Shown here: one piece after another, positions 9,470-62,159 of the stretch
Layout: each line of letters opens with the position of its first letter
How positions within the stretch are numbered: position 1 is the stretch's first letter
DNA from: Octopus vulgaris
Taxonomy: Eukaryota
Reading direction: 5' to 3'
Length of the DNA stretch: 64,000 bases
NCBI GenBank assembly: GCA_951406725.2
Contig: OX597814.1
Location: 28,644,001 to 28,708,000, forward strand
Notes under the pieces: generated by a model
What the model saw: only the letters and a program-made list of their open reading frames with translations
The model's database searches: none
Told to the model about the DNA's origin: nothing
Translations under genes and position numbers: made by a program

Positions 9470-9780
9470 CATATATATATGAACCTTTAGATCCTTCTAG
9501 ATTCTTCTACATTCAGCCACTCTGACGTCACTCCTTATAAACAGACACTCATTATCGCCATGGACTCTTTGAGAGCAGTCAGCTAAAAGTTTTTTGTGCA
9601 TTTTGATGTCGACATAAGTTCCTTGCCTTTCCTGATGAGAAATCTGCATAATGTTCTCCTTATTCCTTCGGAATTAGGAATATGCAGCCTTCGAAACATG
9701 TCGAAAATAAAGGAAATTTGTTAACAAGTCGTTCAACTCCATTCTTTCATATACTTATAATTTTAAAATAAACATACAAA
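9470..9780 (+). mobile_element. Penelope-like terminal (pLTR) fragment carrying a hammerhead motif
   Basis: Adjacent to a TA run and contains the hammerhead at 9628-9706; PLE assignment is inferred from the motif type. Confidence 0.55.
9628..9706 (+). ncRNA. Type-I hammerhead ribozyme motif with canonical core
   Basis: TTTC-CTGATGA-G...CTGCATA..TATGCAG..C-GAAA-CATG-TC-GAAA: helix I TTTC/GAAA, extended helix II, palindromic helix III ACATGT, predicted GUC cleavage after 9702. Confidence 0.75.
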
Positions 9781-16102: not shown

Positions 16103-16195
<93 letters not shown>

Positions 16196-16222
16196 GTATG
16201 TTTATCGCCATGTTGATTCGCT

Positions 16223-16445
16223 AGCCTCTGCACGCATATTTTTTTCTCTCCTTCTTTCTGTGTTTTTTTTCTCTGTGTATCTTTCTGTTGAAGAGCGTAG
16301 GCTCGAAACGTTAAAGACTTTTTTTATTTATATTTCCTGAGCGCCATACTAATACAATTGTTTGTTTGTATTCGACCTGCCTTCGTCTTTTGTTTATTTC
16401 CGTAAACCTGCCTTCGTCTTTTGTCTATTTTCATAAAGCTTCCCG

Positions 16446-16447
<2 letters not shown>
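16223..16447 (+). mobile_element. Hammerhead-bearing mini element (Penelope pLTR-like), ends in (TA)n
   Basis: Homologous to 23324-23517 (-) and 61910-62102 (+); contains the variant hammerhead at 16280-16317. Confidence 0.75.
16280..16317 (+). ncRNA. Minimal type-I hammerhead-like motif with variant core CUGUUGA
   Basis: TCTTT-CTGTTGA-A-GAGC(GTAG)GCTC-GAAA-CG-TT-AAAGA. Confidence 0.6.
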
Positions 16448-16488
<41 letters not shown>

Positions 16489-23282: not shown

Positions 23283-23323
<41 letters not shown>

Positions 23324-23325
<2 letters not shown>

Positions 23326-23517
23326 CGGGAAGCTTTATGAAAATAAACAAAAGACGAAGGCAGGTGGAATACAAACAAACAATTGTATTAGTATGGCGCT
23401 CAGGAATATAAATAAAACAAGTCTTTTACGTTTCGAGCCTACGCTCTTCAACAGAAAGATACACAGAAAAGAAACACAGAAAGAAACAAGGAGAGAAAAA
23501 AAAATGCGTGCAGAGGC
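23324..23517 (-). mobile_element. Hammerhead-bearing mini element nested in a SINE
   Basis: Homologue of 16223-16447; motif at 23422-23459 reads TCTTT-CTGTTGA-A-GAGC(GTAG)GCTC-GAAA-CG-TA-AAAGA on the minus strand. Confidence 0.75.
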
Positions 23518-23820
23518 CGACGGGCTTCATTCAGTTTACGTCTACCAAATCCACTCATAAGGCTTTGGGCAACCTAGTAGAAGATATTTGCCTAAGGTGC
23601 CACACAGTGTGACTAAATCTGGAACCATGTGGTTGGGAAGCAAACTTCTAACCACACAGTCACACCCGCGCCTTCCCCTCCCTGATAGATGTAAAAAGGG
23701 TTCCTTTCAACAAAGTAACCTAAATTTAAACAAGATTCTCTGGGCTTTCGTTGGCGGACAAGGATATGCTGAAAGATAGCAGATATAATTTTATATAACA
23801 TACCCTTCACACACACGTAT

Positions 23821-35984: not shown

Positions 35985-35986
<2 letters not shown>

Positions 35987-36187
35987 GTTAATCCAAACAT
36001 GAAAACACGAAGAGAAAACACAACAACGCAAGGACGTGGAACAAGTATAGTATTATTGGACGCTCAGGAAAGGAAAGAAAGAAGGAGGATTTAATGTTTC
36101 GAGCAGAGCTCTTCGGCAGAAATATAGAAGGAAAGATCCAAGGAAGGGAAGACGGAGGGAAAAAATCGCCAACGGTACACACGCGGA

Positions 36188-61621: not shown

Positions 61622-61754
61622 AATCGTAAGATATCTTTAAAAATTCTATACCTGGATACCGTTATTCTTTGTTTTCAATTTACTACTCATTAGAATAAAA
61701 AGCAATGAATGGATCGTAGAATTAGTAAATTGAAAGCTTTTATTAGAACTTGAA

Positions 61755-62105
61755 GGAGTGGCAGTTTGGTAATAAGTTTGCTTCCCAACCACATGGCTTC
61801 GGGTTCAGTTCTACTGCGTGGCACCATAAGCACGTGTCTTTTAATATAGCCTTGGGCCGACTAAATCCTTGTTAGTGGATTTGATAGACGGAAACCGAAA
61901 GAAACATTTAGCTCCTATACGCATTTTTTTCTCTCCTTGTTTCTCTCCTTGTTTTTTTTCCTGTGTATCTTTCTGTCGAAGAGCGTAGGCTAGAAACGTA
62001 AGACTTGTTCTATTTCTATTCCTGAGCGCCATACTAATACATTTGTTTGTTTGTACTCCACCTGCCTTCGCCCTTTGTTTATTTTCGTAAACCTTCCCGT
62101 TATAA

Positions 62106-62159
<54 letters not shown>

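What the first reader, a model, noticed from the sequence alone, without database searches (positions are those of the whole stretch)
16280..16317. Dispersed family of minimal hammerhead-like motifs with a consistently non-canonical core (position 6 = U or C)
Seen: four related copies (16280-16317 +, 23422-23459 -, 36089-36123 -, 61968-62003 +) all show helix I / CUG[U,C][U,C]GA / A / GAGC-loop-GCUC / GAAA / two-base helix III insert / U-H / helix I'. Two subfamilies differ in helix I (TCTTT/AAAGA vs ATTT/AAAT) and in the helix II loop yet keep the pairing, which argues for structure rather than chance. None has the canonical A6, so the variant looks native to the family and not the result of decay. 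Established: Penelope-like elements carry minimal type-I hammerheads whose palindromic helix III (here ACGU) can form in dimers, and natural core variants exist. Inference: an active or ancestrally active variant ribozyme defining a small TA-targeted retroelement family. The 61968 copy has a helix II mismatch, and the 36089 copy has ACAU (probable CpG decay).
Basis: partly seen in the sequence, partly recalled or inferred. Interest (0 to 1): 0.75.

Follow-up and report, generated by a model that had tools for sequence, protein, structure and literature searches.

The report
Penelope-type minimal hammerheads with mutated core
The four motifs are real copies of a very abundant short mobile element carrying the small "minimal hammerhead" RNA module typical of Penelope-like retrotransposons. 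In its largest lineage one supposedly essential catalytic base is changed, so the element evidently spreads without a textbook ribozyme.

Summary
Observation confirmed. Exactly four copies lie in the window, at the stated places and with the stated anatomy.

They belong to a dispersed family with at least 42,487 exact core matches in this 2.8-Gb genome, against 1 for a reversed-pattern control. The carrier is a 200-400 nt non-coding element. It has a fixed 3' end abutting (TA)n or other microsatellites, and many copies are cut short at the 5' end.

The module shows every accessory trait of Penelope-like-element (PLE) minimal hammerheads:
- a 4-5 bp open helix I
- an extra nucleotide between A9 and G10.1
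- a G10.1-C11.1 pair
- a palindromic ACGU helix III

The core is not uniformly non-canonical.
- 6,014 copies (14%) have CUGANGA.
- 21,773 (51%) have U6. This is the GUAG-loop lineage of three window copies.
- 9,955 (23%) have C4.

Outgroup lineages make A6 ancestral. The C6 of the 36089 copy is a private mutation.

Between lineages, variation falls where hammerheads tolerate it: N7, loop 2, H17, and one covarying helix I pair.

Most likely this is a PLE-derived module kept as a fold but catalytically crippled. Activity is untested, and no autonomous partner was found. The scan reached the same reading on another piece of this genome (s1-118390).

The parts
16204..16446 (+). Element copy 1 (U6/U7 sub-lineage). 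Its 5' end follows a (TATC)n tract. It carries a 31-nt tandem duplication near the 3' end (16375-16405 and 16406-16436).
   Evidence: Contigs from public runs start matching at about 16205-16208.
16277..16321 (+). Hammerhead-like module: helix I 16280-16284 with 16313-16317; core CUGUUGA 16285-16291; extra A 16292; helix II 16293-16296 with 16301-16304; GAAA 16305-16308; CG 16309-16310; U16.1 16311; H17 16312.
   Evidence: Covariance model hit at 67.6 bits; alignment A2.
16447..16483 (.). (TA)n tract abutting the 3' end of copy 1.
23325..23517 (-). Element copy 2 (U6/U7). It is 5'-truncated and sits in the internal TA-rich tract of a tRNA-derived SINE, followed by (TA)n at about 23287-23324.
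23418..23462 (-). Hammerhead-like module of copy 2 (CUGUUGA, GUAG loop, ACGU, A17).
   Evidence: Covariance model hit at 65.4 bits.
35985..36186 (-). Element copy 3, of the 3-nt-loop (UCU) lineage. (TA)n lies upstream and (CA)n downstream.
36084..36127 (-). Hammerhead-like module of copy 3: CUGCCGA (a private A6-to-C change in a CUGAC lineage), helix I AUUU/AAAU, ACAU from CpG decay.
   Evidence: Covariance model hit at 58.3 bits; lineage context (row G000:C1:28680050 is this copy).
61906..62100 (+). Element copy 4 (U6/C7). It is 5'-truncated and sits in the TA tract of another SINE copy, followed by (TA)n at about 62101-62151.
61965..62009 (+). Decayed hammerhead-like module of copy 4: CUGUCGA, C11.1 changed to A, and a deletion in the 3' helix I strand.
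   Evidence: Covariance model hit at 51.4 bits with non-pairs marked.

Best explanation
The four motifs are copies of a short (about 200-400 nt), non-coding retroposon family of at least 42,000 members. The family integrates into (TA)n and other microsatellites by a target-primed process that often truncates the 5' end. About 100-115 nt from its 3' end, each element carries a Penelope-type minimal hammerhead module (type I, dimer-type ACGU helix III). The family's ancestor had the canonical CUGANGA core. One master lineage (GUAG loop 2) fixed A6-to-U and then produced about half of all copies, including three of the window's four. Another lineage fixed U4-to-C. The fourth window copy carries a private A6-to-C change. 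After these core changes, the rest of the module stayed nearly invariant between lineages, while the flanks diverged. I infer that the module is retained as an RNA fold needed by the element, for example for recognition or packaging by a Penelope-like RT-endonuclease supplied in trans. I also infer that self-cleavage is weak or absent and is not required for spread. Shown: the family, its architecture, the core-state counts, the microsatellite flanks, and the lineage pattern. Inferred: dependence on a Penelope element, loss of catalysis, and a non-catalytic role.
For: Family size and specificity: 42,487 anchor hits against 1 control. A search with helix II left free gives 43,351 hits, almost all with GAGC/GCUC. 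Core states: CUGA-N 6,014, CUGU-N 21,773, CCGA-N 9,955. U6 goes with GUAG-type 4-nt loops; A6 goes with UCC, UCU and UUU loops. All four N7 states are abundant within the U6 lineage. [quoted passage not shown] Helix I pair 2.4-1.4 covaries: CG 14, GC 12, AU 2, GU 2. The rival UUUC/GAAA hairpin shows no covariation. Lineage consensus sequences are invariant at 11 of 20 non-anchor hammerhead positions against 35 of 164 flank positions (p = 0.002). Within the U6 sub-lineages the figures are 18 of 20 against 96 of 164 (p = 0.006). Public-run contigs laid on copy 1 pile up 10-30 fold on 16282-16314 and diverge on both sides. In 37 of 42 copies a microsatellite starts 70-240 nt after the motif, mostly 97-116 nt; 31 of these are (TA)n. 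About half have a microsatellite upstream too. (TA)n is a published target of Neptune and Naiad PLEs, and their hammerheads lie near the 3' end (PMC8557442). Hammerhead catalytic mutants do not affect insertion by a purified PLE in vitro (PMC11167929).
Against: No autonomous Penelope element carrying this tail was found. None of 30 GIY-YIG loci has it as its own 3' UTR; their three hits are independent insertions. Covariation rests on a single base pair. RNAalifold alone predicts only helix II. Helix II never varies, so it says nothing for or against pairing. Most copies were collected with a pattern that fixes 16 module positions. No cleavage assay or RNA-end data exist, because only contigs were available. 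Rfam hammerhead models do not score the motif. The lineage consensus sequences come from few copies, and the groups are partly mixed.
Confidence: 0.68

Rival explanations
1. One reading: the U6 core, and perhaps the C4 core, is a naturally active hammerhead variant. It would cleave as a dimer or with protein help, and the family depends on that cleavage.
For: U6 is fixed in a lineage of 21,773 copies that kept amplifying. After A6-to-U, all other core positions, helix II, ACGU and helix I stayed invariant between sub-lineages, while only N7, the one free core position, took all four bases. H17 is A, U or C at lineage level and G only sporadically. Rare natural core variants keep some activity (PMC3088659).
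Against: A6 changes are strongly deleterious; a natural A6C variant has kobs below 0.1 per min. PLE minimal hammerheads are barely active in vitro even with canonical cores. Copies are dispersed singles, so a partner for the 4-bp intermolecular helix III is rarely in cis; only about 2 same-strand pairs within 1 kb occur among 100 hits. In unbiased samples of 100 copies per lineage, at most 1 insertion starts at the cleavage site. No compensating change accompanies U6.
Confidence: 0.12
2. A neutral relic. The module is a dead passenger inherited from a Penelope ancestor, with no role in any lineage. Its apparent conservation reflects recent common ancestry and the way copies were collected.
For: 86% of anchor-bearing copies lack the canonical core. 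Naiad PLEs thrive without hammerheads, and the motifs may simply parasitise PLEs (PMC8557442). My sampling pattern fixes much of the module.
Against: Non-anchor module positions are conserved between lineages far more than flanks. A search blind to helix II still finds the same stem in all lineages. The depth profile of public contigs, which did not depend on my pattern, peaks on the module. One helix I pair shows compensatory change.
Confidence: 0.15
3. Not a hammerhead at all. It would be a plain stem-loop (UUUC/GAAA plus GAGC/GCUC) in the tail of a LINE-dependent SINE that resembles a hammerhead by chance.
For: The alternative hairpin pairs in 92% of cells. RNAalifold supports only helix II. 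Rfam finds no hammerhead. No Penelope partner was found.
Against: Thousands of family members carry the complete CUGANGA...GAAA...H core in the right register, together with four accessory traits specific to PLE minimal hammerheads. Covariation supports helix I, not the alternative stem.
Confidence: 0.05

Closest known systems
Minimal hammerheads of metazoan Penelope-like elements (min-HHR; Cervera and de la Pena 2014, PMC4209133; Lunse et al. 2017, not readable here)
   Same: Type I topology; a short 4-5 bp helix I; an unpaired nucleotide between A9 and G10.1; G10.1-C11.1; no loop 3 and a palindromic ACGU that can form helix III only between two copies. Also shared: massive dispersed occurrence as single motifs, occasional close pairs on opposite strands, and families with exceptional core changes.
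   Different: Helix II is only 4 bp, against 6-8 bp in the schistosome and Drosophila examples. The dominant lineages carry fixed U6 or C4 instead of the canonical core. No flanking Penelope ORF or pseudo-LTR was demonstrated here.
Non-LTR (metazoan) retrozymes, proposed to be non-autonomous PLE derivatives (bioRxiv 10.64898/2026.07.22.740005)
   Same: Short non-coding elements carrying type I hammerheads, related to Penelope pseudo-LTRs.
   Different: Retrozymes are tandem arrays that yield circular RNAs. This family is dispersed as single copies with a fixed 3' end, 5' truncation and microsatellite flanks, and no tandem units were seen.
Schistosome Sm-alpha / Sj-alpha SINE-like hammerhead elements
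   Same: An abundant short retroposon with an internal hammerhead.
   Different: Those elements have a Pol III promoter and an active canonical hammerhead. No A or B boxes were found here, and the core is mostly non-canonical.
Natural hammerhead core variants (Perreault et al. 2011, PMC3088659), for example A6C in phage Bcep176
   Same: A natural substitution at position 6 in an otherwise intact hammerhead.
   Different: That is a single locus with measured low activity. Here it is A6U, fixed in tens of thousands of retroposon copies and untested.

Membership tests
PLE minimal hammerhead (min-HHR) | Type I arrangement with an open, short (4-5 bp) helix I | tested here: met
   Pairs 2.1-2.4 with 1.1-1.4 form in 83-97% of 36 sequences. 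A fifth pair forms only in the window's sub-lineage.
PLE minimal hammerhead (min-HHR) | Canonical core C3 U4 G5 A6 N7 G8 A9 ... G12 A13 A14 | tested here: not met
   The window copies have U6 (three) or C6 (one). Genome-wide only 6,014 of 42,487 are canonical; 21,773 have U6 and 9,955 have C4. G12 A13 A14, C3, G5, G8 and A9 are intact.
PLE minimal hammerhead (min-HHR) | [quoted passage not shown] | tested here: met
   An A is present in all 36 aligned copies.
PLE minimal hammerhead (min-HHR) | G10.1-C11.1 closing pair of helix II | tested here: met
   GC in 35 of 36. The exception is the window's 61968 copy.
PLE minimal hammerhead (min-HHR) | Palindromic 15.2-16.2 with no loop 3 (helix III only in dimers) | tested here: met
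   ACGU is the consensus in every lineage; ACAU occurs in copies through CpG decay.
PLE minimal hammerhead (min-HHR) | Location in the pseudo-LTR or 3' region of an element encoding RT plus GIY-YIG | tested here: inconclusive
   The genome holds many GIY-YIG PLEs: 6,136 candidates, some with 781-aa open frames. None of the 30 sampled carries this tail. No more genomic DNA could be fetched.
PLE minimal hammerhead (min-HHR) | Self-cleavage as a dimer | not testable with these tools
   Needs in vitro transcription assays. Only assembled contigs of RNA runs were available.
Non-LTR retrozyme | Head-to-tail tandem units, each with a hammerhead | tested here: not met
   Copies are dispersed. Among the first 100 hits only two same-strand pairs lie within 1 kb. 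No unit-length direct repeats surround 42 copies.
tRNA-derived SINE | Internal Pol III A and B boxes in a tRNA-like head | tested here: not met
   No A or B box matches in the 750 nt spanning eight of the longer copies. The tRNA-like SINE next to copies 2 and 4 is the insertion target, not part of the element.

The most novel reading that the evidence does not exclude
The hammerhead fold has been kept, but for a job other than cutting. Master copies with a core that should be catalytically dead (U6 or C4) out-amplified their canonical relatives while preserving every other feature of the fold. The minimal hammerhead of Penelope-type elements would then act mainly as a structural recognition module for the retrotransposition machinery. 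This octopus-type genome would be a natural, genome-scale mutational experiment showing it.
Probability: 0.35. Interest if true: 0.6.

Novelty: new variant of a known kind. Interest (0 to 1): 0.45.

Why it matters
What hammerheads do in Penelope-like elements is an open question. They are nearly universal in canonical PLEs, barely active in vitro, absent from the very successful Naiads, and dispensable for insertion by one purified PLE in vitro.

This family adds evolutionary evidence from a living genome. Lineages whose core carries a change expected to cripple catalysis (A6U, U4C) make up about three quarters of more than 42,000 copies. Yet the fold around the change stays conserved between lineages. 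That separates "the fold is needed" from "cleavage is needed", and it gives concrete constructs to test: U6, C4, and their revertants.

For annotation, the result also shows that descriptor- or Rfam-based hammerhead searches miss tens of thousands of such modules in cephalopod-type genomes.

Tried and rejected
- **Rfam.** No hammerhead hit at gathering or permissive thresholds, on the window, on copy 1, or on 20 PLE loci. Only microsatellite-driven miRNA noise appeared.
- **Autonomous partner.** A Pfam GIY-YIG search of the genome gave 30 loci. Regex, BLAST and the covariance model found the module in three of them, always as an independent insertion in a (TA)n tract or on the opposite strand. 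The intact 781-aa PLE has a different 3' UTR with no hammerhead.
- **Wasted search.** One DNA search was run on the wrong strand of L015. After no more genomic DNA could be cut out.
- **tRNA head.** No A or B boxes, so this is not the tRNA-headed SINE noted elsewhere in the scan.
- **RNA evidence.** All runs are held as contigs, so transcript ends and cleavage cannot be read. One cDNA-type contig carries a template-switch oligo joined about 35-40 nt upstream of the core, not at the cleavage site.
- **"Fossil cleavage" test.** Unbiased samples of 100 copies were anchored downstream of the module. At most 1 (U6 lineage) and 0 (UCC lineage) insertions start at position 1.1. This gives no support for cleavage in either lineage, but it is weak evidence, because cleaved RNA might simply not be copied.
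- **Stabilised closed hairpin.** I tested whether U6 or C4 stabilises a closed hairpin. This holds only for the U6/U7 sub-lineage (-10.8 against -7.4 kcal/mol) and is negligible for the others, so it fails as a general explanation.
- **Dimer fold.** My target dimer structure was mis-specified and is not used.
- **PLE "tail".** Only copy 1 has a 31-nt 3' duplication, so this is not a family trait.

Full report
**1. The observation**

The four sites exist as described. An anchor made of A9, the extra A, helix II (GAGC, a 3-5 nt loop, GCU[C/A]) and GAAAC hits 16290-16309 (+), 23430-23449 (-), 36096-36114 (-) and 61978-61997 (+). It hits nowhere else, and none of 100 shuffles produced a match.

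A covariance model built later from 36 family members, run without filters, recovers the same four at 51-68 bits and no fifth copy.

Reading the sequence:
- The cores are CUGUUGA (twice), CUGUCGA and CUGCCGA.
- An extra A precedes helix II in all four.
- GAAA is followed by CG (CA in the 36089 copy), then U, then H17, then the 3' strand of helix I.
- The 61968 copy has C11.1 changed to A. It has also lost bases from its 3' helix I strand.

**2. What the motifs sit in**

Aligning the flanks shows that the motif is part of a longer repeat. The window copies span about 16204-16446, 23325-23517, 35985-36186 and 61906-62100.

In the whole assembly (2.8 Gb, 227 contigs) the anchor occurs 42,487 times on both strands equally, against 1 hit for the reversed control.

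Features of the carrier element:
- **3' end and flanks.** Copies share a constant 3' end about 100-115 nt after the module. In 37 of 42 copies a microsatellite follows, and 31 of these are (TA)n. About half of the copies also have a microsatellite just upstream.
- **5' end.** In the GUAG-loop lineages the 5' ends vary. The longest copies reach about 250 nt upstream of the module. The 3-nt-loop lineages start at a common point about 100 nt upstream.
- **Coding and promoter.** There is no ORF. No tRNA-type A or B boxes were found.
- **Insertion sites of copies 2 and 4.** They sit in the internal TA tract of two copies of a tRNA-derived SINE. I recognise this SINE from memory as the common octopus SINE; that is recollection, not a tested fact. 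The junctions differ, so these are independent insertions into a favoured target.

A fixed 3' end, 5' truncation and microsatellite targets point to a target-primed retroposon. A (TA)n preference and a hammerhead near the 3' end are published properties of Penelope-like elements of the Neptune and Naiad type (PMC8557442).

**3. Is it a hammerhead?**

Rfam does not score it. That is expected for minimal, loop-3-less forms.

The decisive point is that the same family contains thousands of copies with a complete canonical core in the same register: CUGA-N-GA, the extra A, the 4-bp helix II, GAAA, ACGU and H17 (6,014 copies).

The module also has the four accessory traits that Cervera and de la Pena report as emerging in PLE minimal hammerheads without being part of their search descriptor (PMC4209133):
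- a short 4-5 bp helix I
- a G10.1-C11.1 pair
- a palindromic 15.2-16.2

Covariation is thin but real. Pair 2.4-1.4 of helix I is C-G in 14 sequences, G-C in 12, A-U in 2 and G-U in 2, out of 36. The covariation score exceeds all 500 shuffles and all slid controls.

Limits on the structural evidence:
- Helix II never varies, whereas its loop does (GUAG, GUUG, AUAG, UCC, UCU, UUU, GCU and others).
- RNAalifold alone predicts only helix II.
- A competing stem (UUUC with GAAA) pairs well but shows no covariation. It is contradicted by the C, G and A variation at column 5 opposite an invariant C.

**4. The core states**

Among anchor-bearing copies:
- CUGA-N: 6,014 (14%)
- CUGU-N: 21,773 (51%)
- CCGA-N: 9,955 (23%)
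- The remaining 11% or so is mixed decay.

U6 is tied to the 4-nt GUAG-type loop and a C-G fourth helix I pair. A6 is tied to the 3-nt loops and a G-C or A-U fourth pair. Because every 3-nt-loop lineage has A6, parsimony makes A6 the ancestral state and U6 derived within the GUAG lineage.

A few hundred GUAG-loop copies have CUGAU. They could be a surviving sister lineage or back-mutations; I cannot tell which.

The 36089 copy belongs to the UCU-loop, AUUU/AAAU sub-lineage, whose other members read CUGAC. Its C6 is therefore a private change. The other three window copies belong to the sub-lineage with AUCUUU before the core, where U6 is the consensus.

Within the UCC lineage, CCGAC and CUGAC copies differ at linked flank positions. 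C4 is therefore a lineage trait too, not only the undecayed state of a CpG.

**5. Pattern of variation between lineages**

Lineage-level differences fall at these places:
- N7, where all four bases are each represented by thousands of U6 copies
- loop 2
- position 17, which is A, U or C as consensus, with G only sporadic
- the fourth and fifth helix I pairs

These are the positions a hammerhead leaves free. The exceptions are positions 4 and 6.

In consensus sequences of seven lineages, 11 of 20 module positions outside my search anchor are invariant, against 35 of 164 flank positions (p = 0.002). Among the four U6 sub-lineages the figures are 18 of 20 against 96 of 164 (p = 0.006).

An independent view comes from public sequencing runs. 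Their contigs, laid on 16150-16460 at 85% likeness, pile up 10-30 fold on 16282-16314 and run off into unlike sequence on both sides. The module is thus the part shared by otherwise diverged subfamilies.

Caveats: the lineage groups are small and partly mixed, and my copies were collected with an anchor inside the module. A search that left helix II free still found the same stem throughout.

**6. Does it cut?**

This cannot be decided here.

Points against cleavage:
- Position 6 changes are strongly deleterious. The one natural A6C example has kobs below 0.1 per min (PMC3088659).
- PLE minimal hammerheads with canonical cores already cleave poorly in vitro, and only as dimers.
- Copies are dispersed singles, so a partner for the intermolecular ACGU helix is rarely on the same transcript.
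- I looked for a fossil trace of cleavage, meaning insertions whose 5' end is position 1.1. Among 100 copies per lineage, sampled from a downstream anchor and so blind to the module, there was at most one in the U6 lineage and none in the UCC lineage.

Points in favour:
- The fold stayed conserved after A6U.

Published work on a purified Poseidon element found that hammerhead catalytic mutants do not affect insertion, and that no RNA-seq reads end at the cleavage site (PMC11167929). That fits a module kept for something other than cutting.

Copies of the largest U6 sub-lineage are more alike (about 84% pairwise) than UCC-lineage copies (about 71-76%). The core-mutant U6 lineage therefore looks like the more recent burst. 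This estimate is rough.

**7. Link to Penelope elements**

The genome is rich in GIY-YIG elements: 6,136 candidates, many with 781-aa open frames. But none of the 30 loci sampled has this module in its own 3' region. I could not fetch more DNA.

Dependence on a Penelope element therefore rests on the type of hammerhead and the (TA)n targeting. It is an inference.

**8. Relation to earlier notes of this scan**

A follow-up on another piece of the same genome (s1-118390) reached the same reading: short hammerhead-bearing retroposons in (TA)n, with an invariant catalytic base changed in the commonest lineages.

Other notes describe tRNA-headed SINEs with Penelope-type tails. The family studied here has no such head, so it is a different or headless relative.

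**9. Verdict**

This is a real and very abundant feature of a known kind (PLE-type minimal hammerheads in short non-autonomous retroposons), with an undescribed twist: core variants fixed at lineage level, A6U above all.

The claim of a family-wide native variant is only partly right. The claim of activity is untested and, on balance, unlikely.

Noticed in passing
window 9628-9706 (+): A different hammerhead-like motif with a canonical CUGAUGAG ... CGAAAC core and a long (about 55 nt) helix II insert. A near-identical stretch lies in the flank of locus L028, so it too is a repeat family.
   Followed up: partly
window about 23518-23660 (-) and about 61690-61905 (+), continuing beyond the insertions: Copies of a tRNA-derived SINE (A- and B-box head) whose internal TA-rich tract is the insertion site of element copies 2 and 4. 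Loci L008 and L011 show the same thing, so this SINE's TA tract is a recurrent target.
   Followed up: partly
window 16375-16405 and 16406-16436: A 31-nt tandem duplication of the 3' region of copy 1. It is not seen in 41 other copies. It may be slippage, or may relate to the 30-40 bp 'tail' of PLE insertions.
   Followed up: partly
L049:28-1794 and 1795-2450 (G000:C16:20837296-20840559); also L054 and many places listed: A Penelope-like element family with an uninterrupted 781-aa frame at many loci with identical GIY-YIG scores, so it looks recently active. Its 3' region holds about six spaced repeats containing TGATGACGTC and no hammerhead.
   Followed up: partly
window 16246-16265, run X6: Two contigs from one public run carry a template-switch oligo tail joined to the element about 35-40 nt upstream of the hammerhead core. 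The run is therefore cDNA, and some RNA 5' end or internal switch point lies there.
   Followed up: no
L047:150-270: A near-perfect palindrome of about 110 nt (MITE-like hairpin) next to a (TA)n tract. Its weak covariance-model hit was spurious.
   Followed up: no
G000:C1:70859647-70859790 (rows); L024/L025: Two kinds of close inverted pairs occur. One is a head-to-head pair whose arms overlap at the hammerhead core. The other is a tail-to-tail pair sharing one (TA)n tract. The first resembles the inverted 5'-truncated partner typical of PLE insertions.
   Followed up: partly
window 16120-16200: A long (TATC)n microsatellite directly upstream of copy 1. The window in general is dense in (TA)n, (CA)n and tetranucleotide tracts.
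   Followed up: no
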